From positions 124,001-188,000 of the IMG/VR virus record IMGVR_UViG_3300044625_001067: a stretch of 64,000 nt of DNA; one strand, given 5' to 3'. The notes below the pieces were generated by a model. That model saw only the letters and a list, made by a program, of their open reading frames with translations. It made no database searches and had not been told where the DNA came from. Shown here in pieces: positions 15,969 through 32,485 of this stretch. The translations under genes were made by a program, and so were the position numbers. Positions within the stretch are counted from its first letter, which is position 1, and each line of letters starts with the position of its first letter.

Positions 15969-16027
15969 TTCTTAGCGTTTGAGGAGAACCTGAAGTAGGT
16001 CCCTCTTCTTTCTCTCTGTAAGAGAAA

Positions 16028-16431: not shown

Positions 16432-16504
16432 TGGGTTTGGTGGGATTCGAACCCACAACATACCGGGTAAGAGCCGGTTACTCTGCCAATTGAGCTACAA
16501 ACCC
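16432..16504 (-). tRNA. trnK: tRNA-Lys (CTT)
   Basis: GGGTTTG/CAAACCC, loop CT-CTT-AC. Confidence 0.94.
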
Positions 16505-16567
16505 GAACCCCAAGTTTAGAAAGCACCATCGCAGGTACTTGGGCAACCTTTTTCGCTAACGCGAAAA

Positions 16568-16640
16568 TGGGAACGGCCTGATTTGAACAGGCGGCCTATC
16601 GGTTATCAACCGATTGCTCTTACCGCTGAGCTACGCTCCC
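16568..16640 (-). tRNA. trnI: tRNA-Ile (GAT)
   Basis: GGGAGCG/CGTTCCC, loop TT-GAT-AA. Confidence 0.93.
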
Positions 16641-16715
16641 TTGGTACTAAATTGTCAAGTTGCCCCCCGGAAACCGGGTCAGTAAGGAAAGCGGAAGCTT
16701 TCCAACCACCCCTTT

Positions 16716-16759
16716 AGTATAACCGGTTTTGCCGTAGGGCGAAAGGGCGGTTTACCGCC
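16716..16759 (-). promoter_or_regulatory. promoter cassette heading a tRNA operon
   Basis: Dyad GGCGGTTTACCGCC, TTTCGC-17-TATACT, conserved leader. Confidence 0.85.
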
Positions 16760-16817
16760 CCCTTCACCCCTGGTCAACATTGAAGTATTCACTCAGGAAT
16801 GCTTGCGTAAGCAAACA

Positions 16818-16892
16818 TGGCGAGAGGCAGGATTTGAACCTGCGATCTCCAGCTTATGAGACTGGCGAGATACCGGGCTTCTCCACTCCGCT
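16818..16892 (-). tRNA. trnM: tRNA-Met (CAT)
   Basis: Loop CT-CAT-AA; acceptor needs a 1-nt bulge. Confidence 0.82.
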
Positions 16893-16948
16893 ATAAAGAC
16901 CTAGTATTTCAGTTCGGTTTTCGTTTTACGAAAAATGCCCAAGGGCAA

Positions 16949-17056
16949 TGGGTATGGACAGGATTCGAACCTGCAATGCCAGAGGCGACTGCTGTACTTA
17001 CAGCCCACTATTCCCAAGAACCGTGTACACAATTCCTGCTTCAGTGAGACATACCC
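16949..17056 (-). ncRNA. tRNA-like RNA D (Tyr-derived, expanded D arm, 4-nt anticodon loop)
   Basis: GGGTATG/CATACCC acceptor, T arm GCAGG-TTCGAAT-CCTGT, long hairpin in the D position, GCTGT-AAGT-ACAGC arm, GCC-TCT-GGC variable arm. Confidence 0.72.
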
Positions 17057-17079
17057 GTGAAGTTTCCGATAGGAAACAA

Positions 17080-17162
17080 TGGGAGCGGTAGGATTCGAAC
17101 CTACGAAGCATTGAGCAACCGGGTTACAGCCGGTCTCCTTTGACCACTCGGAGAACACTCCC
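17080..17162 (-). tRNA. trnY: tRNA-Tyr (GTA)
   Basis: GGGAGTG/CGCTCCC, loop CT-GTA-AC. Confidence 0.93.
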
Positions 17163-17169
17163 ATTTTGC

Positions 17170-17358
17170 TCTGCAGACACTGCTTTGGGTTGAGCCACCC
17201 CCTACTTTGTATCTCTAAAGTAGTAAAATAGGTTCTTCTAATTGCGGTTTTAACCGCATAACGAGAGAAGTTTTTGGATTTCGAAGAAACCTTTGCACCC
17301 CTTAAACTACCCAAGCATGGAGCTCAGGGGCTGAGTCGAACAGCCATTTCTCTCTTTT
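17170..17358 (-). ncRNA. possible circularly permuted tRNA-like/tmRNA-like element
   Basis: Orphan T arm GGCTG-TTCGACT-CAGCC followed by ...GAGCTCCA; downstream GGGGTGCAAAGGTTTC and several hairpins. Confidence 0.35.
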
Positions 17359-17377
17359 ATTTTCGCGTGAGCGAAAA

Positions 17378-17458
17378 TGGGTCAGGTGGGACTCGAACCC
17401 ACGGTGTTTGTATATCCGGTTAAAAGCCGGGACCTGTCGCCGCTAAGGTAACTGACCC
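17378..17458 (-). tRNA. trnK: atypical tRNA-Lys (TTT) with 12-nt variable loop
   Basis: GGGTCAG/CTGACCC, loop CT-TTT-AA, variable TATACAAACACC. Confidence 0.8.
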
Positions 17459-17533
17459 ATGGTGTTAAATTGTCAAGTTGCCTCCCGCAAGAGCGGAAGC
17501 GAGGCGGAAGCCGAGCTTCCCAACCACCCCTTT

Positions 17534-18819: not shown

Positions 18820-19260
18820 TTACGGCATTGTGCGATTGAAAAAGTCGTAGCCAGGGTAGTCTCCTCCCCAACTGAAAAATTCGTAAGTGATGTCCTTAAA
18901 CTTCCGGGTACTCGCCAGCTTCTGGTCAATAGACCAGCCGTATTGAAGAAGATTGTAAAGGCTCCTGGCGAACCCTTGATGGAGTCTCAGGAGAAAAACT
19001 GCCTCGTCCGTTCCTTGAACCTTACGAACTTTCCACAGGGCTTTTAGTAGCTTTTCGCACGCCTCATAGAGAACTTTAAACCGTCTTTTCTTACCTACAG
19101 GAAAAATCTTGTACTTTTCGTAGTTTGCTTCCGCCTCAATTACGTCTGCGTGGGCAGTCTCAAAGTCTAGGTCGTTGTCAGCAACCATGAAGAAATTCCC
19201 TGAGACAATCCCACCAGAGCACTCTGTTGGCAGAGCGATGGTGTCGTAGTTGATTTTCAT
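18820..19260 (-). CDS. hypothetical protein
   Basis: ATG 19260 (MKINYDTIAL). Confidence 0.7.
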   Translation of the reverse strand: MKINYDTIALPTECSGGIVSGNFFMVADNDLDFETAHADVIEAEANYEKYKIFPVGKKRRFKVLYEACEKLLKALWKVRKVQGTDEAVFLLRLHQGFARSLYNLLQYGWSIDQKLASTRKFKDITYEFFSWGGDYPGYDFFNRTMP

Positions 19261-19305
19261 GGTTAAATTCGGAGTTTCCAGGGACAAGGTGTAAACTGAG
19301 TCGAG

Positions 19306-19476
19306 TTAAAGCATTGGGAGGGGTTTCAACAGGACCCCGTCGTACCCCTCATCGGTAAGCTCCTGCCGGTACGCTTCAGCGTCCCTCTTATGCACAAAAA
19401 GACGCAGACGGGAATCTTCGAAACCAAAGGAGTCAACAAACCCGTAAGGTTCGATCATTACCGCAAAAACTTCCAT
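19306..19476 (-). CDS. small hypothetical protein (56 aa)
   Basis: Manual translation MEVFAVMIEPYGF...KPLPML; directly after promoter 19515; below the ORF-track cutoff. Confidence 0.6.
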   Translation of the reverse strand: MEVFAVMIEPYGFVDSFGFEDSRLRLFVHKRDAEAYRQELTDEGYDGVLLKPLPML

Positions 19477-19514
19477 GTCCTTTTCCCTGAGGGGCGGTGT
19501 TGCCCTGTGTGTAT

Positions 19515-19579
19515 ATTATAGCGTTTCTGCCGAGCAAACCAAGCTGGAAAACCGCCTTATGGGGGTAGGGTTTACCGCC
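19515..19579 (-). promoter_or_regulatory. repeated promoter cassette (last minus-strand copy)
   Basis: TATAAT, TTGGTT (16-bp spacing), two dyads. Confidence 0.75.
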
Positions 19580-19592
19580 CTTTACGCAGTAA

Positions 19593-19888
19593 AGACCGCC
19601 CTCTTTACATGGAAACACGGAAGGCACTGTTGAGGCTCCAGTCACGAACGCCGAAGGAGACGATCTTGACGACTTGACGAGCTGGGGGAATACGACGGTG
19701 AGAAGGATGGGGTGTGGTCGGACCAGGACCCTAAGTTTGATGGGGTGAACGTTGAGTCCACACACTCCCTGGCGAAGCTACTCACATCAAGTGTTATGGA
19801 GCCTATCATGGAGATCATGTTCGGTTCTGACAACGTCATAGTTGCGACTCGTGCCGGATTTAGTGTAGACCAAGCGGACCACGACTGA
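19593..19888 (+). pseudogene. 5'-truncated, frameshifted remnant of a phage hypothetical gene
   Basis: Startless frames ...LHGNTEGTVEAPVTNAEGDDLDD and, shifted, LDELGEYDGEKDGVW...MFGSDNVIVATRAGFSVDQADHD*; protein-like acidic composition. Confidence 0.45.
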
Positions 19889-19904
19889 CTTGGTGAAGGG
19901 GTTG

Positions 19905-19969
19905 AACGGTTAACCCCCACCCTAGGGCGGTTTACCCCCCTTTGTTCTGCTCCACAGAAACGGTATAGT
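19905..19969 (+). promoter_or_regulatory. repeated promoter cassette (first plus-strand copy)
   Basis: Two dyads 21 bp apart, TTTGTT-17-TATAGT. Confidence 0.8.
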
Positions 19970-19993
19970 TAAAGGGTCAATCAGACAACGAAA

Positions 19994-20524
19994 ATGCTTA
20001 CCCAAACTGCTCAGCCCCTTAATAAGCAGCACGCTGGACAAATTCTCCTTCGTGCTACGCGATTCCTGACTGCACCCACCCTAAGCCCCCGACCCGACGG
20101 GTCTGTGAGAGATGTGGCACTCGACACCCGCTGGCTGGGGCGAGACCTTGTGCGTGAGGTCTTTCGGGGCCGAACTGCTGACGAAACGGATGGAAAGTAC
20201 GTGGACGTTGTTACGGACAACGGTAAAAGACTGCGAGTGTTCACTCGCGTCATTTCACGTAGAGCCGATAACGCACTGGTCGCTTGTGCGAACTCTGCTG
20301 AGATAAGCCCCATCAACTTCGCAACTGAAGCGGATAAGCCAGACTCAGTCTTGCTCGTTGCTGTAAACCCTCAGCGAAACACTGTTGACGTATTTGACTT
20401 CCCCCTTGAAGACCGAGGCGGGAAGAAAGTGACCAGGGAGACCTTGGCCGTGTCCTGGTCTGTGAAAAAACAGAATTACGGTAAGCACCAAGCAAAGCTC
20501 ACGTACAGCTACAAAGCTAACTGA
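19994..20524 (+). CDS. hypothetical protein
   Basis: 176 aa ORF after promoter. Confidence 0.8.
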   Translation: MLTQTAQPLNKQHAGQILLRATRFLTAPTLSPRPDGSVRDVALDTRWLGRDLVREVFRGRTADETDGKYVDVVTDNGKRLRVFTRVISRRADNALVACANSAEISPINFATEADKPDSVLLVAVNPQRNTVDVFDFPLEDRGGKKVTRETLAVSWSVKKQNYGKHQAKLTYSYKAN

Positions 20525-20632: not shown

Positions 20633-21238
20633 ATGGAACTAAAATCAACCCTTTCTGAGTCGTTCTTTCACCGGTTCTGCCCAGATCCCACGGTGATGTA
20701 CGATCTTGGAGAGATTTACGCAGAATTTAACGCCCGCTACTTCACTGGGAACTTACCACTTCTTCCTTGTAAGATTCGGACAGACGAAAACGGAGAAACT
20801 TGGTCGCGATACGACACCCTAAAGTGGGATGGTCGCATGGGTCGCAGAATTCTTGGCACATACAAAACGTCTGCACGACGTGGGTTCGGAACAATTCGCC
20901 TCTCTCGCGTAATTGCAGGTGACCCTGTAAAAACACGAAGCGTCCTCCTGCACGAGATGCTTCACAAGTATCTTGATCTTGAGCGCCGAGACGACGGTAT
21001 TAAGGGTCACGGTGAAAATTTCGTATCCGAAGCAAAGAGAATCAACGAACTTTGTGAAAGCACCAGAGTTAAGCACCGCATTCAATTCTACGACGAAGAG
21101 ATCACACAAGATCAACCGTTCGTCATACCCGAGCTTTTGGATGACAAAGTTAATTGTAGCAAAGATCTAGACATTGCTCGAAACATGCAGTCTGTGATGA
21201 GGGCCGCGTTCTCACAAAAATTCGAGTACTTTCAGTGA
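20633..21238 (+). CDS. SprT-like zinc metalloprotease domain protein
   Basis: FNARYF...IRLS...VLLHEMLH...GHGENF SprT pattern. Confidence 0.8.
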   Translation: MELKSTLSESFFHRFCPDPTVMYDLGEIYAEFNARYFTGNLPLLPCKIRTDENGETWSRYDTLKWDGRMGRRILGTYKTSARRGFGTIRLSRVIAGDPVKTRSVLLHEMLHKYLDLERRDDGIKGHGENFVSEAKRINELCESTRVKHRIQFYDEEITQDQPFVIPELLDDKVNCSKDLDIARNMQSVMRAAFSQKFEYFQ

Positions 21239-21278: not shown

Positions 21279-21620
21279 ATGAGACCTAAACAAGAACAAT
21301 TGAACGAATGGGGAGAACGTTACTTCTGTGAAGACCAGTCTAAAACCGAACTTTTTGTGCAAGAGGTGGCAGAGTGGGTAGTCAAGGAAATTGCACAGGA
21401 GTTTGACAGGAAAGAACAAGCAGGTGCAAAAGGTTACGGGCCGAGTCTTCCCGCTAAGCTAGTACGACAGTTTGGTTCGCCATCTGGCCCAACACTCAAG
21501 CAGCTTTCCTTGCTTGCTCTAAACGAACTTGTGCCTGTCGAGGACAGGGAGAAAAGTTCATACAAGCTGCTGTTAACCGTTATTTCAACCTTGCCCGAGA
21601 CACCAACCAATACTCTTTAA
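21279..21620 (+). CDS. hypothetical protein
   Basis: 113 aa ORF. Confidence 0.7.
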   Translation: MRPKQEQLNEWGERYFCEDQSKTELFVQEVAEWVVKEIAQEFDRKEQAGAKGYGPSLPAKLVRQFGSPSGPTLKQLSLLALNELVPVEDREKSSYKLLLTVISTLPETPTNTL

Positions 21621-21738: not shown

Positions 21739-23226
21739 ATGACATTTGTGACAGAAAACTTAACGAAGAGTTCTAAAGCTGCTTCGAACGGAAATGGAAA
21801 ATGCAACGATAACTGTTCTGTGAGTGAAGCCGTTGTCTGTGATTTACGCTCTCGCCCGGAACCTCGTCGAATTGACCTCGACAAACTATACGAGTGCGAC
21901 CCGAAAGACTATATTGGCTATTTTGCCGACGAAACCTCTTACGACAACCTTATTCAAGAAGACTGCGACGTTTATGTGGGCGGAGTGAAAGTTGTTGCCT
22001 TTCGTAAGGCACTTTTTCCGAAGCTGCGCGATGGTTCGAAAGGTAGCCCGGAAACTTGGAAATACTTCCGCTGGGCAGCAAGAGACTTGTACTCAGACCA
22101 ACGAGGCCTAGTTGCTGGTAGAGAACTAACTACCCAACTCGAGATAAGGGTAACCAACGGTATTCTAAACTTCTTCAAGAAGGCGATGGCCGGTCAAGTC
22201 ACTGACGTGGAAGAGGCACTGAAAATTGCTTCTCTCTCCCCCGACATGTCAAAGCTCACTGTCCGAGTGAATGATGTTAAAAAGGACTTCCCAGAAATTG
22301 AGAAAGCTTTAGAATCTATCGAGAAGGAACTTCGCAAGAAAACGCTGAGCGAAGAAAGAAAGGTAGAGCTGAAGGAAGCGAAGGGTAGAGAACTTGCGAA
22401 GTGGTTCCCGACTTGGCTGTCTGAGACTTGGAGTGCATCTACGGATAAGGTTTCTGAGGCGAAACGTGCCGACGACAGGTATGTGGGAAAACAATACCGT
22501 TCAAACAAGTGCTATTCCAACGTGATTGGTGCTTTTGATAGGGGTGCACGTAACCCTTACGGTCGTTTGACCGCAACAACTGTAAAAGACTATGAGGGGT
22601 TCGTAAGCCACACGGATATTTATCAGACCGCGTGCTCTGCGCTCAAAGAGACCTTGAACACTCCGGAAAACCCTCGGTGGGACCTCCTTCACGAACGGTT
22701 CAGTAACGTGAAAGACCCGCACTATAACCTCTTCGGTACGGTGTTCACTGCCCTTACGTTAAACTGGAACTTCCGCTGTGCGATGCACTATGATGGAAAT
22801 AACTGCGAAGGTGGTATTGCCGTTCTTACTGCAATTACTCAGGGCGAATATGACGGTCACTACCTTGTGTTCCCTGAAATTCGTTGCGCTTTTGACCTTC
22901 GCGACGGAGATTTCATTGCAGGCGACAACCAGGGCTTGATTCACGGCAACACCGCGATGATCCCTAAAACTCCGGACGCTGAACGAGTTTCGTTCGTTTT
23001 CTATTCACGAGAGCGCATGACCGCTCTTGACGATATGGAGTGTGAGGAGTGCCGCCGAGATTTCATGCGATACGCAGCAGACAACCACAAGGAATACGGA
23101 AAGGGTCACAAGACATGGAATGGTGTCTGGAGCGGAATGTGGAAATCACCGGAATGGATGACGTATAAAGCCGAACACGGCATGGAACGTTGCTCAAATA
23201 CTAACTATTGGGGCACCGATAATTGA
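21739..23226 (+). CDS. 2OG-Fe(II) dioxygenase, TET/JBP family (copy 1)
   Basis: FTALTLNWNFRCAMHYD (HxD), IHGNT (distal His), ERVSFVFYSRE (2OG Arg), YLVFPE; matches the JBP/TET pattern. Confidence 0.85.
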   Translation: MTFVTENLTKSSKAASNGNGKCNDNCSVSEAVVCDLRSRPEPRRIDLDKLYECDPKDYIGYFADETSYDNLIQEDCDVYVGGVKVVAFRKALFPKLRDGSKGSPETWKYFRWAARDLYSDQRGLVAGRELTTQLEIRVTNGILNFFKKAMAGQVTDVEEALKIASLSPDMSKLTVRVNDVKKDFPEIEKALESIEKELRKKTLSEERKVELKEAKGRELAKWFPTWLSETWSASTDKVSEAKRADDRYVGKQYRSNKCYSNVIGAFDRGARNPYGRLTATTVKDYEGFVSHTDIYQTACSALKETLNTPENPRWDLLHERFSNVKDPHYNLFGTVFTALTLNWNFRCAMHYDGNNCEGGIAVLTAITQGEYDGHYLVFPEIRCAFDLRDGDFIAGDNQGLIHGNTAMIPKTPDAERVSFVFYSRERMTALDDMECEECRRDFMRYAADNHKEYGKGHKTWNGVWSGMWKSPEWMTYKAEHGMERCSNTNYWGTDN

Positions 23227-23281
23227 GTCCTAAAGACTACCAAAGTGGCATTTAACGAACGAAAACACAGGATTACTAACT

Positions 23282-23617
23282 ATGGACACAAACAAACAGC
23301 TTAACGGTGGCGATGCGGAGCGGCAAGTTGCCTCGGGGAGTATTGAACCCAGTGAAGCAACAACCGCCATTACAGTGGAACTCCCGGTAAACTTCGCTGA
23401 GGCTTTTCGAGCACTTGCTGAACGAGAGGAGTTGTCGGAGAGTAACCTTATTGTACGATCGCTCGGGCTCTACTCCGTTGCATCTCAAGCCGAGAGTGAA
23501 GGGTACGGACTGACGTTTACTCGTATTGAGGGAACCAACGACCTGACCGCCAAGGAAGCAATTCGCGTCGAAGATGAGCCCGCGTCTAACTTGATCCTTC
23601 CTGGAAATAGGCAATGA
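23282..23617 (+). CDS. ribbon-helix-helix-like protein
   Basis: ITVELPVNFAEAFRALAERE..SESNLIVRSLGLY; similar to the C-terminus of 1535..2704. Confidence 0.6.
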   Translation: MDTNKQLNGGDAERQVASGSIEPSEATTAITVELPVNFAEAFRALAEREELSESNLIVRSLGLYSVASQAESEGYGLTFTRIEGTNDLTAKEAIRVEDEPASNLILPGNRQ

Positions 23618-25101
23618 TCCGAGAGGTAATATCAAAAGAGTTACAGTCAAGGGTCGAACCCTTACAGATTGATAGGGGTGCTCTTGAAAACTGCCCTCGC
23701 AGTGAATATATTGGACAATTCCCTAAGGCGACAGACTATGACCGCGTAATCGATGAAGACTGTGATGTTTACGTCTCAGGTGTAAAAGTCTTGTCCTTCA
23801 GGAAAGCTCTTTTCCCACTTCTTTCCGAGGGTTCTTCCAAACAGAAGGAGACTTGGGACTTTTTCCGAGCAGCTTCAAAAGAAGTTTACGGCACCCAAAG
23901 AGGTGTCGTTGCGGGCACAGAGTTTACAACTCGCCCCGAATCACGCTTAACCAAAGGACAGGTTGCCTTTTTCGCTAGTGCTTCAGTGGGCTTGATCACA
24001 ACGCTCGCTCAAGCGCGAGAAACCCTAGAAAGTTCGGATGAGCTCACCAGCAAGACTCTGAAAATCAAATACGTGAAGAAAGACTACCCCGAACTTGCGG
24101 AGAAAATGAAACCGTTAGAGGCGGAAATTCGCACACTGAACTCCGGAGACCCGAAACCAGAAAGTCTGAGAAACCAGAGAAGAGAACAGCTTTGGGGTTG
24201 GTTCGAACCTTGGTTACTAGAAGTTTGGCTGCCCTCAGAAAACAAAGTAGAAGAAGTTAAAAAAGTTCTAAACACTTACATAAGTTCCCAGTTGAACTTT
24301 AACCACTGCTACAGTAACGTCCTTGGGGCGATTGACCGTGGGGCTAGATTTCCCTACGGTCGTTTAAGCGGAACCACTCAGAGATACTATGAGCAGTTCT
24401 CAAAATACAGAGACATTTATTACACAGCCTGCGAAGGTTTCAGGTACAATTTTCCGGAGACTTGGGTCAAAGTCAAGGAAGTGATTTCGAGGGCTAAAGA
24501 CCCTAACTACAACTTGTTCGGCACTGCCTTTACGAGTGTAACCGTAAATTTCAATTTCAAGACTGCCTACCACGTTGACAAGAACAATTTGAAAGGGGGT
24601 ATGTCCGTCTTAACTGCTTTTACAAAAGGTGTTTATGAAGGTCACTACTTAGTGTTTCCCGAAGTGAGATTGGCCTTCAATTTAAGAGACGGGGACTTCA
24701 TCGTAGGGGATACTCAAACTTTGCTCCATGGTAACAGCCCCATGACAAAACTTACTGAAGATGCTGAGCGGGTTTCTCTGGTTTTCTACTCACGAGAGAA
24801 CATGAACCGATTGGACGATCTTGAGTGCGAAGAATGCCGAAAACAGTTCATGAAGTTTTCACTTCAGTCTCTGAAAGAACGGGGCAAAGATCATAAAGAT
24901 TGGAGAGGTGTTTGGCAAGGTATGTGGACTTCTCAAGAATGGCTAGACTTTAGAAAAGAAAGAAACTTGGAACACTGTTCAAACTCTAATTGGCAGCTTT
25001 CCTCGCCGTACGAGAACGAAGTTACGAAAGAGGTGAAGTTGTTCAAGGATGATCCAGGCGAAGGGTGGAAACTCGTACAAGTGTTTACACAAGATCGGTA
25101 A
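23614..25101 (+). CDS. 2OG-Fe(II) dioxygenase, TET/JBP family (copy 2)
   Basis: [33 protein letters not shown]; collinear with copy 1 along its length. Confidence 0.85.
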
Positions 25102-25157
25102 ACCGCCCTGAAGCCTTCGGCTTCCCCCTTGTTTCTGCTTCGCATAAATGCTATGAT
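25094..25157 (+). promoter_or_regulatory. repeated promoter cassette
   Basis: TTGTTT-17-TATGAT; distal dyad ATCGGTAAACCGCC. Confidence 0.75.
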
Positions 25158-25162
25158 TGTTT

Positions 25163-25760
25163 TATGGAAATCTACTTCAGCACAGACGTTGAGACCGACG
25201 GACCGATCCCCGGACCTAACAGCATGCTTTCGCTCGGGTCGGCTGCGTTTTCCCCTGAAGGAAAACTCCTAAGCACCTTCTCGGTGAACCTAGAGACCCT
25301 CCCCGGAGCCGAACCGGACCCCACTACCCAAGCGTGGTGGGAGTCTCACCCGGAGGCCTACAGAGCCTCTCGGGAGCATACCCGGAGTCCGGACCAAGCC
25401 ATGTTGCTCTTCTCGGGTTGGGTTGGCCAGACCGTGAAAGCTAACAGTAACCAAGATTCAGGTGGCCGGAAAGCCTTGCCCGTATTCGTGGGTTTTCCTG
25501 CAGGGTTTGACTTTCTTTTCGTGTATTGGTACCTTATTCGGTTCACTGGACAGTCCCCATTTAGCTTCTCGGCGATTGACGGTAAGACCTATGCTATGGC
25601 CTTGCTCAAAAGAGGATACCGGGAGTCCACAAAACGAAACTACCCAAAGGAGTGGTTTCCCATCGAAAACAAGCATACTCACATCGCTGTAGAGGATGCC
25701 ATTGAACAAGGTCGTATTTTCTGCAATATGCTTCGATCCAATCTTAACATCCTACCTTAG
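25163..25760 (+). CDS. DEDDh-type 3'-5' exonuclease
   Basis: [22 protein letters not shown] motifs; ATG 25163 after promoter. Confidence 0.85.
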
Positions 25761-25939
25761 TGACTAACAAAGTTAAAGATTACTGCGAAAAACTTAGCTT
25801 GTCCCTGAAGTTAAGGGGAGAGGGAAACGAGGACGCGGAGGAGGCCTTGCTCGACGAGCTTGACCTTCTGTGGCTGAAGTTGTCAAGAGAAGAGGCCCAG
25901 TGGGTTAATGCCAATATACTGTCGTTGTTACCTAACTAA
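25760..25939 (+). CDS. small hypothetical protein (59 aa)
   Basis: Manual translation; GTG overlaps the upstream stop. Confidence 0.55.
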   Translation: MTNKVKDYCEKLSLSLKLRGEGNEDAEEALLDELDLLWLKLSREEAQWVNANILSLLPN

Positions 25940-25948
25940 TTACCCACC

Positions 25949-26713
25949 GTGACGAAAAATCCTACTTTCCTACTCCAGTCCGGAGGACCACTACAAATCG
26001 AAAAGGTTGCGTGTAGTTTCTCCTGTTACCCTGTCCAATATTGCTCGTTTTATGATCTGTCGAAGTTAGACCCTAAAGGTTTCATGGCTACATTGATTCC
26101 TGTGGGATCGGTGGAATTTGTTCAAGCTTACAGTGAACACGCAGGTGTTGTGCTACCTGAAGACTTTTCTTACGGACACGGTGGGGAACTGGAAAAGTAC
26201 CTTATGAGGTCCGTTCGACAAGGAGTGTACGGTGAAGCAACCTTGGAAGACTTTGTGAAGCCAACCGCAATAAAGTTGTTTACCGGGGACATCAAGAGAG
26301 AGCTCGAACTGAAGATACCTGGACTAATTTCTGATAACACTTCAGTGTGGATCTCTCAGGCTGTGCTTTTTGAGTCGGAATTTAGGTTCTACATTCACGA
26401 CTTCATTGGGGGCGGTAAAATTCAGGGGTGGTCGCGGTATGACGACAAGCCCGTAAGAAACCCAGAACCCGACTTCGGCCTGATTGAAGAGATTATGGGT
26501 GTGCTAGAGGCAAATATTGCGCCCGGTGCTTACACGATTGACATCGGCTGGAGGCCTGACCTGAATCGGTACTGCCTAGTTGAACTTAACGATGCGTGGT
26601 CACTGGGATTTTACGAAAATAGTGACCCGCAATCAAACCCTCCAACTCGACAGCAGTACGCTGACATGCTGGTGTCTCGCTGGAGACAAATTACCTTTTG
26701 CAACCTAGTGTAA
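25949..26713 (+). CDS. ATP-grasp domain protein (DUF4343/R2K-like)
   Basis: FVKPTAIKLFTG, ESEFRFYI, YTIDIG, LVELNDAWSLGFY. Confidence 0.75.
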   Translation: MTKNPTFLLQSGGPLQIEKVACSFSCYPVQYCSFYDLSKLDPKGFMATLIPVGSVEFVQAYSEHAGVVLPEDFSYGHGGELEKYLMRSVRQGVYGEATLEDFVKPTAIKLFTGDIKRELELKIPGLISDNTSVWISQAVLFESEFRFYIHDFIGGGKIQGWSRYDDKPVRNPEPDFGLIEEIMGVLEANIAPGAYTIDIGWRPDLNRYCLVELNDAWSLGFYENSDPQSNPPTRQQYADMLVSRWRQITFCNLV

Positions 26714-26801
26714 CCACTGGATAACACAGTCGGAGATAAGAGGACGCGGCAAACGTCTACTCTTGACGCTCCGACAACAGTCACATCAACTGCACTCAAA
26801 T

Positions 26802-27629
26802 ATGGACTATCAGATTGCCATCCCAACTTACGGAAGGCCCGATGGAGTGAAGAAACTCACTCTAAATTACCTTGAAAAAACAGACATTAATTGTTCCCAC
26901 GTGACTTTGTTCGTGGCAAACGATGAAGAGAAGGAAATTTACCAGAGTTCAAACCCTACATACAATATCGTTGTTGGTGAAAAGGGTTTGACAAAACAAC
27001 GTCACTTCATCTCTAACTTTTACGACAAAGGGACTCCTGTTTTTTCGTTCGACGACGACGTTAGCGCCGTTGAGGAACTTGAGCTCTTAAAAGACCTTGA
27101 GGGGACTCAGAAGCCACTTGACCACCCGTGTCGCCTGAAAACCGTGGTGGAACTCTCGGATCTTATCGATCGCGGCTTCCGAATGTCCAAGCGGCGCAAT
27201 ATTGGCCTGTTCGGTTTCTATGCCGTTCGCAACAAGGGTTTTCTTCACCCAAAGGTGACTGTGGGACTCAAGTTCATTATGGGCCACGCATTCGGTTTCT
27301 ACGCAGGCGACCCAGCCTTTGATCTAATCGCTGAGTACAGTATGAAGGACGATTACTTCTTGTCTCTGTACCACACTGTTAATGGAAACGGAACACTGCG
27401 ATTCGACAACATCTGTGTGAAAGCTAAACAGCACACAGGCGGTGGCGGAACCTGCGAAGACCTGGAGCGAAAGCTTCAGATTAATAACCAAACCGTAGAG
27501 AAACTTTGTGCTGAGTTTCCGGACCTCGCGAGTCCAAAGAGCCGTCGAACAAAGGATGAGTGGCTTTCCCGGTACTCTGAAATCCGCCTCAAAACAATCA
27601 CAAACGAGACAATCTCAGTGCTTAACTGA
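26802..27629 (+). CDS. TET-associated (GREB1-like) GT-A glycosyltransferase
   Basis: IAIPTYGR, GLTKQR, FSFDDD (DxD), KDDYFLSL, GGGG motifs; ATG 26802. Confidence 0.82.
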   Translation: MDYQIAIPTYGRPDGVKKLTLNYLEKTDINCSHVTLFVANDEEKEIYQSSNPTYNIVVGEKGLTKQRHFISNFYDKGTPVFSFDDDVSAVEELELLKDLEGTQKPLDHPCRLKTVVELSDLIDRGFRMSKRRNIGLFGFYAVRNKGFLHPKVTVGLKFIMGHAFGFYAGDPAFDLIAEYSMKDDYFLSLYHTVNGNGTLRFDNICVKAKQHTGGGGTCEDLERKLQINNQTVEKLCAEFPDLASPKSRRTKDEWLSRYSEIRLKTITNETISVLN

Positions 27630-27636
27630 GCACCAA

Positions 27637-27679
27637 GGCGGTTTTCCGCCCTTTACTGTAAGCTCCTCTCCCCTATGTT
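27637..27679 (+). promoter_or_regulatory. repeated promoter cassette
   Basis: Dyad GGCGGTTTTCCGCC, TTTACT-16-TATGTT. Confidence 0.65.
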
Positions 27680-27700
27680 TAGAACAGCTTCCGGCTACCA

Positions 27701-28057
27701 ATGATTCCCGACCCAAAGAAAACCATAGTTTTCGATGTTGACGACACCATCCTCACAACAGAAAACCGCGATTACGAAAACTCTCTACCGAAGATGGAAG
27801 TAATTGTGGGTATGCGAGCAATGAAGGACGCAGGGTGGACGATCATCTTGAATACAGCGAGGGGAATGGGTCGTTCAGACGGTGACATCGAAAGTGTTAG
27901 ACAAGAAGTTATCGAGGAAATCGAAAAGTTCTGCACTAAATTCGATGTACCCTACGATACCATCTTGGTTGGAAAACCTTGGGCGGCATACTACGTAGAC
28001 GACAAAGCAATGACTCCCGCTCAGTTCTCCGCAAAATATAAGGAAATCGCACAATGA
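27701..28057 (+). CDS. HAD phosphatase (capsule-biosynthesis phosphatase-like)
   Basis: VFDVDDTI, TARGM, GKP, YYVDDKA. Confidence 0.85.
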   Translation: MIPDPKKTIVFDVDDTILTTENRDYENSLPKMEVIVGMRAMKDAGWTIILNTARGMGRSDGDIESVRQEVIEEIEKFCTKFDVPYDTILVGKPWAAYYVDDKAMTPAQFSAKYKEIAQ

Positions 28058-28767
28058 AGAACGCACTCATTCTTGCTGCCGGTCGTAGTACTCGGTTTGG
28101 CCGAAACAAACTTGAGGAAAAGTTTGACGGGGTGTCACTTCCTTACCTGGCTGCCAAGTTCGCTCTTGAAAACGGTGCGGAAAACATCTATCTGACGCTC
28201 TCGCGCTCGGCGATTAAGACCGACGGGACTCGCATTTACCACCCTGTTCTAGATGAAGTTTCCAAGATTTGCGACCCGATTGTTCGTTTCCAGAGTGAGG
28301 AAACTTACGGACCAGGCGCTGCGATCACTACGTGGGCAGGCGTGATCAACGGCCCACTCACTGTGCTGTTTGGGGATAATTACTACCACGGAACGATCCC
28401 CCCTGCCGAACGAGTTTTACTTGGCTCTGACCTTGAGAACTCAGTGTGGTTTTCATACCTTCATAAGTCACTAAATCCACGAAATCTTCAACTCGCCACA
28501 GTAATCGACAACTATGTGATTGAAAAACCACACGGACAACTCGAAGGCCGTTACTTCTGTGGTTTTGTCCGTTTCCCTGCGGGATACCTTGACACCATTG
28601 GTGACCTTCGCAAGAGCGACCGTGGCGAGGTTGAAATTACGGATATGATAAACATGGCGGAGCATCGTCAAGCAGTATCACTTTCTTCCATGGGTGTGAT
28701 ATGGGGAGACTTAACTTACGAGGCGGATTGCGCTCGCATTCGGGAGCTTGTTAGTGAAGGGAAGTAG
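28054..28767 (+). CDS. sugar-1-phosphate nucleotidyltransferase (RmlA-like)
   Basis: ILAAGRSTRF, GDN, IEKP, SDRGEVEITD. Confidence 0.87.
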   Translation: MKNALILAAGRSTRFGRNKLEEKFDGVSLPYLAAKFALENGAENIYLTLSRSAIKTDGTRIYHPVLDEVSKICDPIVRFQSEETYGPGAAITTWAGVINGPLTVLFGDNYYHGTIPPAERVLLGSDLENSVWFSYLHKSLNPRNLQLATVIDNYVIEKPHGQLEGRYFCGFVRFPAGYLDTIGDLRKSDRGEVEITDMINMAEHRQAVSLSSMGVIWGDLTYEADCARIRELVSEGK

Positions 28768-29500
28768 TGGGGCCACCCTGGATTTCTCTGGGGATTTCAT
28801 ACGGAAAAAGTGTAAGGATGCCGGTGAGCAGTGCGAGTGGTTTCGCATTGCTTCTCGGTATACCTTGGCACCAAGTGTTCGCCTCCCGCAAACAATCTGT
28901 GTGTCGGACTCAGACTACGACATTGAGTTTATTGAAGGTGTTTGTGGAACACAAATTGAATCTACACGTTTGATTGACACTTTGGTAGACCAGGTCTTCC
29001 TTTGGTCTAAGCTCCCTGCGTCAAGACACACGGACTGGGGGTCTTACAAAGAGCGTCTTCACTTAGAGCACGTTTCTCTGACAGACAGCGAGATAGTTCG
29101 TCGAACTTTCGATTTCCTCGACGAAATAGTTCCACTACCTTCCTCCTTCTCGCATGGTGACCTAACGCTTGAAAACATCATTGTAGAAAATAACGGGGGA
29201 ATAGTTCTGATCGACCCTAATTTCAAGACTAATTTGTTTCAGTCTTACGTTCTCGACTTAGGTAAATTGCTACAGTCTGTCCACAGCGATTATCACCGGT
29301 TGTTCAAATCACACCCAGGATGTGACCCTGCGCCTCTGTGCGCCCACTTGAGACAACGGCTAGGCAAACCCTTATGGACTCAGGCGCTGGCCGCTGAGAT
29401 ATCGCACGTGATCCGCCTGCGCAAGTACCGCCCTTCCGCCCAGTGGCCGACGGTCGACCGGCTGTTGGGGCAGCTGCTGGCTGAAGCCCATGGATGTTAA
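28748..29500 (+). CDS. APH/choline-kinase-fold phosphotransferase (putative sugar kinase)
   Basis: SHGDLTLENII and LIDP motifs; coupled to the nucleotidyltransferase. Confidence 0.82.
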   Translation: MLVKGSSGATLDFSGDFIRKKCKDAGEQCEWFRIASRYTLAPSVRLPQTICVSDSDYDIEFIEGVCGTQIESTRLIDTLVDQVFLWSKLPASRHTDWGSYKERLHLEHVSLTDSEIVRRTFDFLDEIVPLPSSFSHGDLTLENIIVENNGGIVLIDPNFKTNLFQSYVLDLGKLLQSVHSDYHRLFKSHPGCDPAPLCAHLRQRLGKPLWTQALAAEISHVIRLRKYRPSAQWPTVDRLLGQLLAEAHGC

Positions 29501-31032: not shown

Positions 31033-31575
31033 ATGGCAACTATTTACAAACCACCGGCACAGCTACCCCCTTTCTCATCGAGGCTCAGTGTATTTCTTGC
31101 AGGTTCAATAGAAATGGGCTCTGCACCCGACTGGCAAGCTGACCTCGAACGTAGTCTTGCTGACATTGACATTGACATTTACAATCCGCGACGCGACGAT
31201 TGGGACCCAACTTGGGTTCAAAGCGCCGATAACCCGGTGTTTCGAGAGCAGGTTGAGTGGGAGCTTGATGCCCTAGAGATGGCTGGCATGGTTGTCATGT
31301 ATCTGGCACCGGGTACCATTAGTCCTGTTTCTTTGCTCGAACTTGGCTTCGTCGCCGGATTCGGTTTCTACGCTGTCAGAAAAACGGTTGTGTGTTGCCC
31401 AGAGGGGTTCCACCGCAAGGGTAACGTTGACATTTTCTGTGGCCAATACGGAATTCCCCAGGTTTCAAGTCTTGACGGGCTTGAACTGGCTATACGACGA
31501 GAAAATGCAAGGGTACAGAAACTCAAGTCTCATGGGAATCGTGGGAGCATTGAGACGAGAAACCCTGGAGAGTAA
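31033..31575 (+). CDS. nucleoside 2-deoxyribosyltransferase-like protein
   Basis: VFLAGSIEMG, NPRRDDWD, QVEWELDAL, SPVSLLELG. Confidence 0.85.
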   Translation: MATIYKPPAQLPPFSSRLSVFLAGSIEMGSAPDWQADLERSLADIDIDIYNPRRDDWDPTWVQSADNPVFREQVEWELDALEMAGMVVMYLAPGTISPVSLLELGFVAGFGFYAVRKTVVCCPEGFHRKGNVDIFCGQYGIPQVSSLDGLELAIRRENARVQKLKSHGNRGSIETRNPGE

Positions 31576-31577: not shown

Positions 31578-31937
31578 ATGACCGGCACCACCTTTAACTA
31601 TCCACCCCATTTACCCGACTTCGATGACATGGACCCGGACGGTGCCATTGAAGTTTTGTTAGGGGAAGACGAGGACGGGTACCAACATACTCGTTTCGAG
31701 AGCGTGGCCTACTACCGGAACACAGGAAAGACCCACCCTTGGCGTCACACCAAAGACTGGGCTCCTCGCTCAAACTACACCGAGGAGGACTTTACCTGGG
31801 CTTTGTCGAGAATTTTGAACACAGTTACCTGTTCTCGTGACCTTCGTAGCAAGGGCCTTGGGCTCACCGACGACGAATGCCGACGCATATACTCAATGCG
31901 GGACCGGGCTAGGGAGGTAGCGAAGCACGATGGGTGA
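31578..31937 (+). CDS. hypothetical protein
   Basis: 119 aa ORF. Confidence 0.7.
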   Translation: MTGTTFNYPPHLPDFDDMDPDGAIEVLLGEDEDGYQHTRFESVAYYRNTGKTHPWRHTKDWAPRSNYTEEDFTWALSRILNTVTCSRDLRSKGLGLTDDECRRIYSMRDRAREVAKHDG

Positions 31938-31993
31938 CCGGTTGCTCCGGGGCGGTTTCCCGCCTTGTTTTCTCGAAGAGAAAACGCTATAGT
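31929..31993 (+). promoter_or_regulatory. repeated promoter cassette
   Basis: Dyad GGCGGTTTCCCGCC, TTGTTT-17-TATAGT, spacer dyad TTTTCTC-GAA-GAGAAAA. Confidence 0.88.
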
Positions 31994-32023
31994 AGTTACA
32001 AGACAAACGCTCCCGAGAAAGAC

Positions 32024-32485
32024 ATGAAAGGACAACTCCTCAATAAAATGCTGGTACTGGCGACCAACTCCCACGCCGATCAGTACGACAAGGGTGGCAA
32101 CCCTTACATTTTGCACCCGCTCAAGGTGATGCATTACCTGAAGACCGACGATGTTGAGCTTCAGTGCATTGCGCTCGGTCACGACATTATTGAAGACACC
32201 AAGGTCACTTACGCAGATTTACGTGATCAGGGGTTCACTGCCCGAATTATCGAAGGCATTCGATGCCTAACGAAAGCACCGGGGGAAACCTACGAAGAGT
32301 ACAAGTTCCGTGTTTTCTCAAACGAAGACGCCATGAGAGTGAAGCTCTGTGACTTGAGGCACAATACTGACGTTCGGCGTCTGAAAGGTGTCACCGATGG
32401 GGACATTGCTCGAACTGTAAAGTACCATGTTTTCTACCTGGAGATTATGGCCCGGCTACCGAAAATTGACGAAGGTGATTCTTGA
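32024..32485 (+). CDS. HD-domain protein, RelA/SpoT hydrolase (Mesh1/SAH)-like
   Basis: HADQYDKGGNPYILHP, ALGHDIIEDT, VKLCDLRHN; ATG 32024. Confidence 0.85.
   Translation: MKGQLLNKMLVLATNSHADQYDKGGNPYILHPLKVMHYLKTDDVELQCIALGHDIIEDTKVTYADLRDQGFTARIIEGIRCLTKAPGETYEEYKFRVFSNEDAMRVKLCDLRHNTDVRRLKGVTDGDIARTVKYHVFYLEIMARLPKIDEGDS

What the first reader, a model, noticed from the sequence alone, without database searches (positions are those of the whole stretch)
21739..29500. Predicted DNA base hypermodification pathway: TET/JBP dioxygenases, glycosyltransferase and its own nucleotide-sugar supply
Seen: two TET/JBP-type dioxygenases, a GREB1-like GT-A glycosyltransferase, and a coupled HAD phosphatase, nucleotidyltransferase and kinase trio within 8 kb. 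Established: phage TET/JBP enzymes hydroxylate 5mC or T in DNA, and neighbouring glycosyltransferases add sugars (the base J logic). Inference: the phage makes its own activated sugar and attaches it to 5hmC or 5hmU, possibly giving a new base that blocks the many cyanobacterial restriction enzymes. No C5 DNA methyltransferase is visible in the window, so thymine (base J-like) is a possible substrate.
Basis: partly seen in the sequence, partly recalled or inferred. Interest (0 to 1): 0.8.

Follow-up and report, generated by a model that had tools for sequence, protein, structure and literature searches.

The report
Cyanophage thymine-sugar DNA hypermodification cassette
A lake cyanophage carries a compact gene set that most likely oxidises thymine in its own DNA and attaches a sugar it activates itself, much like base J; this kind of system is already recognised in phage metagenomes, but its product here has never been measured.

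Summary
On the + strand, 20.6-29.5 kb, lie a SprT-like gene, two intact TET/JBP dioxygenase paralogues (49% identical), a DEDD exonuclease-like gene, an R2K ATP-grasp ligase, a TET-associated GT-A glycosyltransferase (TAGT), and a translationally coupled mini-HAD phosphatase, sugar-1-phosphate nucleotidyltransferase and APH-fold kinase.

Thymine is the more likely substrate.
- No DNA methyltransferase domain occurs in the 64-kb window, in 10 kb beyond each end, or near any of about ten related dioxygenase loci.
- None is annotated in the complete genome of the closest isolate, Synechococcus phage S-CBWM1.
- In sister phages with 82-93% identical dioxygenases, the glycosyltransferase-plus-sugar module is replaced at the same position by the classical thymidine-hypermodification set (AADT, P-loop kinase, GATase).

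The sugar trio resembles the phage AfhF/AfhE pathway (UDP-arabinofuranose) and the HAD/APH/nucleotidyltransferase set that puts heptose on 5hmC. Which sugar is used here is unresolved.

The predicted product is a base J-like 5-(glycosyloxymethyl)uracil.

The kind of system is known (Burke 2021, Pyle 2024, O'Toole 2026). This is an uncharacterised variant in an abundant lake phage, and it has a cultured relative in which it can be tested.

The parts
20633..21238 (+). SprT-like zinc-metalloprotease-type gene. It sits upstream of the dioxygenases in this phage, in S-CBWM1 and in L023. Its role is unknown.
   Evidence: PF10263 E 1.4e-09; synteny.
21279..21620 (+). Small ORF (113 aa) of unknown function preceding TET-A. 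Conserved in S-CBWM1-like loci, absent from L023.
   Evidence: No Pfam or PHROG hit; tblastn synteny; not related to the 111-aa ORF.
21739..23226 (+). TET-A: long-form (495 aa) TET/JBP Fe(II)/2OG dioxygenase. Predicted thymine (5-methylpyrimidine) hydroxylase acting on DNA. Orthologue of the single S-CBWM1 enzyme.
   Evidence: PF12851 E 1.6e-13; H350-x-D352, H402 and R416 present; 58% identical to S-CBWM1 gp009; tree.
23282..23617 (+). Small ORF (111 aa) between the two dioxygenases, with a segment that looks by eye like a ribbon-helix-helix; possibly a regulator. A 124-aa ORF overlaps it on the - strand, so which strand codes is not settled.
   Evidence: conserved at 68-82% aa identity in sister loci; no family hit.
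23614..25101 (+). TET-B: second long-form TET/JBP dioxygenase, 49% identical to TET-A. Member of a separate accessory paralogue clade that occurs together with a TET-A-type gene.
   Evidence: PF12851 E 7.7e-19; H320/D322/H372 invariant in 43 homologues, R386 aligned to the 2OG-binding Arg of TET2; AF2 pLDDT 94.1, best PDB folds CcTet, CMD1, TET2, NgTET1; clade support 100/100; absent from L011/L012.
25164..25760 (+). DEDD(h) 3'-5' exonuclease-like gene. The listed ORF starts at 25065; the probable start is ATG 25164. Role in the pathway unknown.
   Evidence: PF16473 E 1.1e-05, below cutoff; phrog_255 exonuclease E 8.6e-07; DVETD, GFDF and HIAVEDA motifs.
25949..26713 (+). R2K-clade ATP-grasp ligase. 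It travels with the dioxygenases in both sugar-type and amino-acid-type loci but is absent from S-CBWM1. Substrate unknown.
   Evidence: PF14243 E 2.7e-19, PF18299 E 2.5e-18; synteny; family predicted to be peptide ligases (PMC4431377).
26802..27629 (+). TAGT: TET-associated GT-A glycosyltransferase (JGT/GREB1-like). Predicted to transfer the sugar onto the hydroxymethyl group of the oxidised base in DNA.
   Evidence: PF20691 E 4.9e-10, above cutoff; phrog_842 'beta-glucosyl-HMC-alpha-glucosyltransferase' E 1.5e-11; PTYGR...FDDDV...KDDYF matches the R...DDD...EDY/F motif of JGT-like phage GT-A enzymes; 62% identical to S-CBWM1 gp010.
27701..28057 (+). Mini-HAD phosphatase (118 aa) of the AfhF / RB69 gp51 / 1xpj family. 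Predicted to remove the non-anomeric phosphate from a sugar bisphosphate.
   Evidence: TIGR01689 E 3.3e-25; HAD-IIIA E 1.2e-06; PDB 1xpj E 6e-21 and 9iqw E 8e-14; DVDDT, TARG, GKPW and VDDK motifs; 397 phage records hold homologues; role of the homologues from PMC13326640.
28054..28767 (+). Sugar-1-phosphate nucleotidyltransferase (237 aa). Makes the NDP-sugar donor; which nucleotide it uses is unknown.
   Evidence: N-terminal LAAGRSTRF motif; NTP_transf_3 E 1.5e-05; Arch_glmU / rmlA_long hits; profile against PDB: ST0452 8.5e-11, RmlA 3.4e-08.
28754..29500 (+). APH/fructosamine-kinase-fold small-molecule kinase (248 aa). Predicted anomeric kinase for a sugar phosphate.
   Evidence: PF01636 E 1.5e-05; HGDLTLEN and IDPN motifs; AF2 pLDDT 94.7, Foldseek top hits APH(3')-Ia, FN3K, APH(2''); profile aligns to the kinase domain of the RB69-like NT-kinase fusion.

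Best explanation
This is a post-replicative DNA hypermodification cassette of a lake cyanophage. Four steps are proposed.

1. TET-A, helped or complemented by its paralogue TET-B, uses Fe(II) and 2-oxoglutarate to hydroxylate the C5-methyl of thymine in phage DNA, giving 5-hydroxymethyluracil.
2. The APH-fold kinase phosphorylates the anomeric position of a host sugar phosphate. The mini-HAD then removes the other phosphate to leave sugar-1-phosphate. The nucleotidyltransferase converts that to an NDP-sugar.
3. The JGT-like GT-A enzyme TAGT transfers the sugar to the 5hmU hydroxyl. The result is a base J-like 5-(glycosyloxymethyl)uracil.
4. The bulky base presumably shields the genome from host nucleases.

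Shown here: family and fold assignments, intact catalytic motifs, gene coupling, conserved synteny, and exchange of the decoration module. Inferred: thymine as substrate, the order of the kinase and phosphatase steps, the sugar (a pentofuranose or a heptose are the precedents), and the protective role. The ATP-grasp ligase, the exonuclease and the SprT-like protein belong to the conserved core, but their steps are unknown.
For: Dioxygenases:
- Both pass the Pfam cutoff and keep HxD...H...R.
- The model has pLDDT 94 and its best PDB matches are DNA-bound TET enzymes.

Glycosyltransferase:
- TAGT passes its cutoff and carries the JGT-type motif.

Sugar trio:
- The mini-HAD belongs to the 1xpj/AfhF family. 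Homologues of that family dephosphorylate Ara-1,5-P2 in the phage UDP-Araf pathway, next to an NT-kinase fusion (PMC13326640).
- An HAD/APH/nucleotidyltransferase set was required for heptosylation of 5hmC (Pyle et al.).
- The NT profile hits sugar-1-P nucleotidyltransferases. The kinase has a small-molecule kinase fold.
- The same trio (40-60% identity) sits beside other DNA-modification genes: ParB + TET + a TAGT-like GT in L027, and a ThyS-like gene + C5-MTase in L026.

Thymine as substrate:
- No methyltransferase domain in the window or 10 kb beyond each end.
- None annotated in the complete S-CBWM1 genome, which encodes ThyX, dCMP deaminase, dUTPase and dTMP kinase.
- L008, L010 and L013 keep 82-93% identical TET-A/TET-B but carry GATase, an amidoligase-like gene, AADT and P-loop kinase 3 in place of TAGT and the trio.
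- The same link is seen in L023/L024 and in four more distant loci, with no DNA_methylase hit.
- O'Toole et al. use exactly these criteria to predict phage T-dioxygenases.

Transcription:
- Contigs from lake metatranscriptome libraries are 100% identical to the cassette.
Against: - No chemistry has been measured.
- The window is 64 kb of a 277-kb contig. With flanks, only about 84 kb was scanned, so a distant phage C5-methyltransferase cannot be excluded. Host cytosine methylases could also supply 5mC.
- Burke et al. noted that P-loop kinases also occur in C5-MT/TET clusters, so the AADT link is supportive, not proof.
- The dioxygenases are about 200 aa longer than the characterised phage T-dioxygenases. 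They could not be placed against those reference sequences.
- The NT and kinase are only remotely similar to AfhE (NT not significant).
- No sugar isomerase is present, so the sugar is unknown.
- In the T4-like cyanophage S-CAM3, a similar trio sits beside tail-fibre and heptose-epimerase genes. The trio is therefore not by itself diagnostic of DNA modification.
- RNA-library contigs may reflect carried-over DNA.
Confidence: 0.65

Rival explanations
1. Cytosine route. 5-methylcytosine is supplied by a phage C5-methyltransferase encoded outside the scanned 84 kb, or by host methylases. The TET enzymes make 5hmC, and TAGT glycosylates 5hmC, as in the Burke/Pyle phage clusters.
For: - The phage TETs first characterised act on 5mC and pair with GT-A enzymes.
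- The same sugar trio lies next to a C5-MTase in L026.
- Only about 30% of the 277-kb contig was examined.
Against: - In the characterised systems the methyltransferase is an immediate neighbour. None lies within 20-40 kb here or near about ten related loci.
- None is annotated in the complete S-CBWM1 genome.
- Sister loci carry the AADT / P-loop kinase set known from 5hmU chemistry.
Confidence: 0.17
2. Decoupled functions. The dioxygenases modify DNA (5hmU only, or feed another pathway). TAGT and the sugar trio glycosylate a non-DNA target such as virion proteins or a host envelope component.
For: - GREB1, a TAGT-family member, glycosylates a protein (title and abstract of PMC7968844).
- S-CAM3 carries a kinase / mini-HAD / NT set beside tail-fibre and heptose-epimerase genes.
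Against: - TAGT and the trio occupy the very slot that holds DNA-acting AADT and kinase genes in sister phages.
- TET-TAGT-trio is a conserved contiguous unit in S-CBWM1.
- The trio recurs beside ParB-TET-GT and ThyS/MTase DNA-modification genes.
- TAGT carries the JGT-type motif.
Confidence: 0.07
3. Two-track modification. TET-B drives oxidation beyond 5hmU to 5-formyl- or 5-carboxyuracil. The R2K ATP-grasp ligase then amidates the carboxyl group, giving a second, non-sugar modification alongside the glycosylated base.
For: - Phage T-dioxygenases can oxidise iteratively (abstract of PMC13229309).
- TET-B forms a distinct paralogue clade that co-occurs with TET-A.
- R2K co-travels with the dioxygenases whatever the downstream module.
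- ATP-grasp enzymes activate carboxylates (general knowledge of the family).
Against: - L011/L012 keep R2K without TET-B.
- S-CBWM1 lacks both yet keeps the sugar pathway.
- R2K enzymes were predicted to modify proteins.
- There is no direct evidence for any DNA substrate.
Confidence: 0.08

Closest known systems
Base J pathway of kinetoplastids (JBP1/2 thymidine hydroxylases + JGT glucosyltransferase)
   Same: A TET/JBP-family oxidase followed by a GT-A glycosyltransferase of the JGT/TAGT type. The predicted product is a 5-(glycosyloxymethyl)uracil in DNA.
   Different: - Here the system is in a phage, with two long-form paralogues that lack the JBP DNA-binding and SNF2 parts.
- The phage has its own NDP-sugar supply, so the sugar is probably not UDP-glucose.
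- There are extra ATP-grasp, exonuclease and SprT-like genes.
Phage 5mYOX (TET) + glycosyltransferase gene clusters from metaviromes (Burke 2021 PMC8256090; Pyle 2024, bioRxiv 10.1101/2023.12.21.572611), especially 'contig 53'
   Same: Post-replicative oxidation plus a DNA glycosyltransferase. Contig 53 needs HAD/APH and nucleotidyltransferase genes to attach heptose. Judging from their annotation-term table, the HAD part may be the same TIGR01689 type.
   Different: - Those tested clusters carry a neighbouring C5-methyltransferase and modify 5hmC.
- Contig 53 uses a GT-B enzyme, an HAD-APH fusion and a CTP_transf-type transferase.
- Here there is no methyltransferase, the glycosyltransferase is a GT-A TAGT, the three sugar genes are separate, and the transferase is RmlA/ST0452-like.
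Phage T-dioxygenases, ParB-independent and ParB-dependent subclasses (O'Toole 2026, PMC13229309)
   Same: A Tet_JBP catalytic core, no adjacent C5-methyltransferase, and neighbours that are glycosyltransferases or AADT / P-loop kinase / GATase genes.
   Different: - No ParB gene is present.
- The proteins are 495 aa, whereas the one ParB-linked homologue seen here is 278 aa (L027), with a conserved extension of about 230 aa at the N terminus.
- They occur as a conserved paralogue pair.
- Their placement in clades C1/C2 was not tested.
AfhE/AfhF-type UDP-arabinofuranose supply of RB69, DLP3 and HY126 (PMC13326640)
   Same: A mini-HAD of the 1xpj family next to a nucleotidyltransferase and an ELK-fold kinase, encoded in the order NT then kinase. 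The logic is: sugar phosphate, then bisphosphate, then sugar-1-P, then NDP-sugar for a DNA glycosyltransferase.
   Different: - There the NT and kinase are fused, an arabinose-5-P isomerase is encoded, the glycosyltransferases are GT-B, and the acceptor is 5-hydroxycytosine made before replication.
- Here the genes are split, there is no isomerase, and only the kinase catalytic loop aligns.
Thymidine hypermodification by 5-HMUDK P-loop kinase + AADT (aGPT-Pplase), as in the phage systems cited
   Same: It occupies the same genomic slot, downstream of near-identical dioxygenases, in sister phages L008, L010, L013 and L023. This implies the same 5hmU intermediate.
   Different: This machinery is not present in the window. 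It attaches amino acids or polyamines through a pyrophosphate intermediate, not a sugar.
Synechococcus phage S-CBWM1 gp007-gp013 (NC_048106)
   Same: The closest isolate, with SprT-like, small ORF, TET, TAGT, mini-HAD, NT and kinase in the same order (41-62% aa identity).
   Different: It has a single dioxygenase and no exonuclease or R2K gene. Its genes are annotated as 'SNF2 DNA repair protein', 'phosphoheptose isomerase' and so on. None of the abstracts listed for S-CBWM1 concerns DNA modification; the papers were not read.

Membership tests
TET/JBP (5mYOX) DNA dioxygenases | Match to PF12851 above the gathering score | tested here: met
   50.6 and 67.9 bits against a cutoff of 34.9.
TET/JBP (5mYOX) DNA dioxygenases | HxD...H iron triad and 2OG-binding Arg on a double-stranded beta-helix | tested here: met
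   H350/D352/H402/R416 in TET-A and H320/D322/H372/R386 in TET-B. The triad is invariant in 43 homologues. The motifs align to TET2. Foldseek top hits are CcTet, CMD1, TET2 and NgTET1.
TET/JBP (5mYOX) DNA dioxygenases | Oxidation of a 5-methylpyrimidine in DNA | not testable with these tools
   Needs an enzyme assay or nucleoside LC-MS.
Phage T-dioxygenases (O'Toole 2026) | No neighbouring C5-methyltransferase; neighbours are GT or AADT / P-loop kinase / GATase genes | tested here: met
Phage T-dioxygenases, ParB-dependent subclass | Adjacent ParB-like activator gene | tested here: not met
   No ParB_N hit in the window. The two small neighbouring ORFs are unrelated to each other and hit no family. 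A ParB-TET pair was seen only in the distant locus L027.
Phage T-dioxygenases, clades C1/C2 | Phylogenetic grouping with 5mYOX89, 97 or 176 | not tested
TAGT / JGT-like GT-A DNA glycosyltransferases | PF20691 above cutoff and the R...DDD...EDY/F active-site motif | tested here: met
   40.1 bits against 27.5; PTYGR, FDDDV and KDDYF, with Asp in place of Glu in the last motif.
TAGT / JGT-like GT-A DNA glycosyltransferases | Genomic linkage to a TET/JBP gene | tested here: met
   1.7 kb downstream of TET-B, and directly downstream of the TET gene in S-CBWM1.
AfhF-type mini-HAD sugar-bisphosphate phosphatase | Membership of the 1xpj/TIGR01689 family with the HAD motifs | tested here: met
   1xpj E 6e-21 and 9iqw E 8e-14; DVDDT, TARG, GKPW and VDDK. 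The TIGR01689 score of 88.5 is below the subfamily cutoff of 162, so it is a relative, not an equivalent.
AfhE-type bifunctional NT-kinase | Nucleotidyltransferase and kinase fused in one protein | tested here: not met
   Two separate ORFs that overlap by 14-20 nt. The RB69-like phage HX01 has a 561-aa fusion.
AfhE-type bifunctional NT-kinase | Detectable sequence homology to AfhE | tested here: inconclusive
   The kinase profile aligns to the HGD...IDP region of HX01 gp141, E 9e-06 in a database of ten sequences. The NT profile is not significant.
Phage UDP-arabinofuranose pathway | Phage-encoded arabinose-5-phosphate isomerase (SIS domain) | tested here: not met
   No SIS or isomerase hit in any window ORF of 90 aa or more.
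AADT / 5-HMUDK thymidine hypermodification | AADT (PF18724) and P-loop nucleotide kinase 3 (PF18751) genes | tested here: not met
   Absent from the window. Present in sister loci L008, L010 and L023.

The most novel reading that the evidence does not exclude
The locus is a plug-and-play thymine-hypermodification platform. It has a conserved oxidation core: a SprT-like protein, a pair of long-form dioxygenase paralogues, a DEDD exonuclease and an R2K ATP-grasp ligase. It also has an exchangeable decoration module, either a sugar module or an amino-acid module. In this phage it would yield a nucleobase not yet described: 5hmU carrying a non-glucose sugar such as a pentofuranose or a heptose. 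The ATP-grasp ligase may elaborate that base further, and the two dioxygenases may divide sequence contexts or oxidation states between them.
Probability: 0.3. Interest if true: 0.7.

Novelty: new variant of a known kind. Interest (0 to 1): 0.5.

Why it matters
If confirmed, this would be a natural base J-like thymine glycosylation in an abundant freshwater cyanophage lineage. No glycosylated 5hmU from a cultured phage came up in the papers read here.

The case is easy to test. The cultured relative S-CBWM1 carries the minimal version, so nucleoside mass spectrometry could settle it.

The module swap between near-identical phages, sugar versus amino acid, shows how phages change their DNA chemistry by cassette exchange. 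Presumably this happens under pressure from host nucleases.

The split AfhE/AfhF-like trio extends a newly recognised route to nucleotide sugars: anomeric kinase, then bisphosphate phosphatase, then nucleotidyltransferase. That route could be useful for enzymatic DNA glyco-labelling.

Tried and rejected
- Megablast of the cassette against GenBank phages found nothing. Only protein-level relatives exist.
- A literature search for bcbF/ecbF/TIGR01689 returned only unrelated papers.
- I tested whether the two small ORFs before each dioxygenase are paralogues or ParB-like activators. They are unrelated to each other and hit no family.
- tblastn of the nucleotidyltransferase against phages found only S-CBWM1. 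phmmer of the kinase against the PDB found nothing, and its profile gave only a weak choline-kinase hit.
- The NT profile against the RB69-like AfhE fusion was not significant.
- I asked whether the 277-kb contig is a head-to-tail dimer of a 139-kb genome. A 38-nt probe occurs only once in it, so the genome is probably large and the window covers less than a third.
- Walking the whole contig for a methyltransferase was given up after one step on each side. Each look-up adds only about 10 kb.
- The sugar could not be named from sequence. Pentose (AfhE/F precedent) and heptose (contig 53 and S-CAM3 context) both remain open.
- The promoter/terminator consensus scan gave no clear operon boundaries. 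It did show stem-loops after TAGT (27637-27650) and after TET-B (25110-25124).

Full report
**What is there**

Genes 19.9-33.3 kb all lie on the + strand, with short gaps or 4-nt overlaps. In order they are:

| Gene | Coordinates | Evidence |
|---|---|---|
| SprT-like | 20633-21238 | PF10263, E 1.4e-09 |
| 113-aa ORF | 21279-21620 | no family hit |
| TET-A | 21739-23226 | Tet_JBP |
| 111-aa ORF | 23282-23617 | no family hit |
| TET-B | 23614-25101 | Tet_JBP |
| DEDD exonuclease-like | probable start 25164, to 25760 | weak Pfam and PHROG hits |
| 59-aa ORF | 25760-25939 | no family hit |
| R2K ATP-grasp ligase | 25949-26713 | PF14243, PF18299 |
| TAGT GT-A glycosyltransferase | 26802-27629 | PF20691 |
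| mini-HAD phosphatase | 27701-28057 | TIGR01689, 1xpj |
| nucleotidyltransferase | 28054-28767 | RmlA/ST0452-like |
| APH-fold kinase | 28754-29500 | PF01636, fold |

- Both dioxygenases and TAGT exceed their Pfam gathering scores.
- The two dioxygenases are 49% identical over 463 residues. Both keep the HxD...H iron triad and the Arg that aligns with the 2OG-binding Arg of TET2.
- An AlphaFold model of TET-B, built on 43 homologues, has pLDDT 94.1. Its best PDB matches are CcTet, CMD1, human TET2 and NgTET1, most of them DNA complexes.

It omitted the ATP-grasp, exonuclease and SprT-like genes.

**Which genome**

The window also encodes:
- 34 tRNAs;
- topoisomerase II, a pol-gamma-like DNA polymerase, a sheath-like protein and a Mu-type portal.

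The closest isolate is Synechococcus phage S-CBWM1: polymerase 57% and TET 44-58% aa identity.

The window equals positions 124,001-188,000 of a 277,244-bp contig, JBFDQS010003190.1 = IMGVR_UViG_3300044625_001067. A 38-nt probe occurs once in that contig, so it is not a dimer.

The sequence is present in many lake-water metagenomes from 2016 to 2024. Contigs from lake metatranscriptome libraries are 100% identical to it, including a 1,211-nt contig across the HAD, NT and kinase genes. That fits transcription, although carried-over DNA is not excluded.

**Conserved synteny and module exchange**

- S-CBWM1 carries the minimal version in the same order: SprT-like, small ORF, one TET, TAGT, mini-HAD, NT, kinase.
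- Contigs L011/L012 are like the window but lack TET-B.
- Contigs L008, L010 and L013 keep SprT, both small ORFs, TET-A (82%), TET-B (92-93%), the exonuclease and R2K. They then replace TAGT and the trio with a GATase, an amidoligase-like protein, two unknown proteins, an amino acid:DNA transferase (AADT, PF18724, E 3e-18) and a P-loop nucleotide kinase 3 (PF18751).
- L023/L024 (TETs 47% identical) show SprT, TET, TET, R2K, GATase, AADT, a GT4 and a P-loop kinase.
- Four more distant loci each carry an AADT.

No DNA_methylase hit was seen in any of these neighbourhoods.

A maximum-likelihood tree shows TET-B as a monophyletic clade (100/100). It co-occurs with a TET-A-type gene on the contigs where both can be seen. 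The single S-CBWM1 enzyme is of the A type.

**Substrate: thymine or 5mC**

- No methyltransferase domain was found in any window ORF of 90 aa or more, nor in 10 kb beyond either end.
- None is annotated in the complete S-CBWM1 genome, which encodes ThyX, dCMP deaminase, dUTPase and thymidylate kinase and therefore makes dTTP.
- In the characterised 5mC-type phage systems the C5-methyltransferase is a direct neighbour.
- O'Toole et al. predict, and for representatives prove, T-dioxygenase activity for phage enzymes that lack such a neighbour and sit with GTs or with GATase / P-loop kinase / AADT genes.

The replacement of the sugar module by that machinery, behind near-identical dioxygenases, is the strongest indirect argument that the shared intermediate is 5hmU.

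Caveats:
- About 190 kb of the contig is unscanned.
- Host methylases exist.
- P-loop kinases also occur in some C5-MT/TET clusters.

I put thymine at roughly 0.7-0.75.

**The sugar supply**

Mini-HAD:
- It has all four HAD motifs and belongs to the 1xpj/TIGR01689 family.
- tblastn finds homologues in 397 phage records, mostly T4-like phages of enterobacteria and Acinetobacter.
- In those phages the homologue (RB69 gp51, DLP3 gp81, HY126 AfhF) dephosphorylates arabinofuranose-1,5-bisphosphate. It acts next to AfhE, a fusion of nucleotidyltransferase and kinase, to give UDP-arabinofuranose for DNA glycosylation (PMC13326640).

Nucleotidyltransferase and kinase:
- They are separate genes in the same order.
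- The NT profile hits sugar-1-phosphate nucleotidyltransferases: ST0452 at 8.5e-11 and RmlA.
- The kinase model (pLDDT 94.7) matches aminoglycoside and fructosamine kinases.
- The kinase profile aligns to the catalytic loop of the RB69-like fusion.

Other precedents and contexts:
- Pyle et al. showed that an HAD/APH fusion, a nucleotidyltransferase and a GT are all required to put heptose on 5hmC.
- The same trio, at 40-60% identity, lies beside a ParB-TET-GT set (L027) and beside a ThyS-like gene with a C5-MTase (L026).

'Its own nucleotide-sugar supply' is therefore well supported. The sugar itself is not identified:
- there is no isomerase in the window (against the arabinose route unless the host supplies Ara5P);
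- the transferase type differs from contig 53;
- in cyanophage S-CAM3 a related trio sits by a heptose epimerase.

**Glycosyltransferase**

TAGT carries PTYGR...FDDDV...KDDYF. This matches the R...DDD...EDY/F motif shared by phage GT-A DNA glycosyltransferases and the base J glucosyltransferase.

**Unassigned parts**

- R2K ATP-grasp enzymes are predicted peptide ligases of conflict systems. Here the gene travels with the dioxygenases whatever the decoration module, but S-CBWM1 lacks it.
- The exonuclease has DEDDh motifs.
- None of the papers read here describes an SprT-like gene beside a TET gene.

These genes are the least understood part and the main source of possible novelty.

**Comparison and verdict**

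The system works like base J synthesis. It belongs to the phage 5mYOX-glycosyltransferase kind already described from metaviromes. It differs in five ways:
- it combines a likely T-dioxygenase, in a long form and as a paralogue pair, with no ParB;
- it uses a GT-A TAGT;
- it has a split AfhE/AfhF-like sugar supply;
- it carries ATP-grasp, exonuclease and SprT-like companions;
- its decoration module is visibly exchanged between close relatives.

I rate it a new variant of a known kind, of moderate interest. A simple decisive experiment is available in the cultured relative S-CBWM1.

Noticed in passing
window 660-17459 (- strand): An array of 34 tRNA genes covering nearly all amino acids, interspersed with small ORFs. 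S-CBWM1 has a comparable array.
   Followed up: partly
window 31033-31575 and 31934-32485: A nucleoside 2-deoxyribosyltransferase-like gene (PF15891, E 2e-32) and an HD phosphohydrolase (phrog_990, E 8e-58) lie just downstream of the cassette. Both are also conserved in the AADT-type sister locus L008. They may act on the nucleotide pool in connection with the modification.
   Followed up: partly
L008:13213-17599, L010:13307-18419, L013; L023:14027-18980: In sister phages the sugar module is replaced by GATase, an amidoligase-like gene, AADT and P-loop kinase 3 (plus a GT4 in L023). L010 also has a PAP2/VCPO-like 447-aa gene at 19004-20347.
   Followed up: yes
L014, L015, L017 (near the long-form TET genes): Myo-inositol-1-phosphate synthase domains (PF01658, best E 9e-23) matched 3 of the 58 ORFs pooled from L014, L015, L017 and L021. 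These loci also carry AADT next to TET, which hints at yet another decoration chemistry. The hits were not mapped to individual loci.
   Followed up: no
L026:4618-11439: A different context for the same mini-HAD/NT/kinase trio: a short thymidylate-synthase-like gene, a 430-aa C5-methyltransferase, the trio, a 398-aa unknown protein, a GNAT and a dCMP deaminase. Probably a cytosine-directed glycosylation pathway.
   Followed up: partly
L027:6546-10547: ParB_N + a 278-aa Tet_JBP (the ParB-dependent type) + the same trio + a 270-aa protein whose sequence by eye shows TAGT-like DD and EDF motifs, with amidoligase and GATase upstream.
   Followed up: partly
window 23276-23650 (-) versus 23282-23617 (+): Two overlapping ORFs on opposite strands lie between the dioxygenases. 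The + strand product has a ribbon-helix-helix-like segment. Which strand codes was not resolved.
   Followed up: no
window 42529-43635: A DUF1517 protein (E 1.3e-54), a family I recall as typical of cyanobacteria and plastids (from memory, not checked), so a host-derived gene in the phage.
   Followed up: no
window 50955-53885: A DNA polymerase with a mitochondrial pol-gamma-type exonuclease domain, shared with S-CBWM1, S-TIM5, A-HIS1/2 and Mic1 cyanophages.
   Followed up: partly
L013:11512-13830 and L008:11193-11450: The exonuclease gene of sister contigs is interrupted by insertions (about 2.3 kb in L013), possibly a mobile element.
   Followed up: no
L029 (S-CAM3) 5361-7415: A T4-like cyanophage carries kinase, mini-HAD and a short NT-related gene beside an ADP-heptose 6-epimerase and tail-fibre genes. 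PHROG and GenBank label these mini-HADs 'phosphoheptose isomerase', which is a misnomer for a phosphatase.
   Followed up: partly
window 11906-13066 (- strand): A 386-aa ORF within the tRNA region with weak protein-kinase / ABC1 / APH-like hits. S-CBWM1 also encodes several eukaryotic-like kinases.
   Followed up: no
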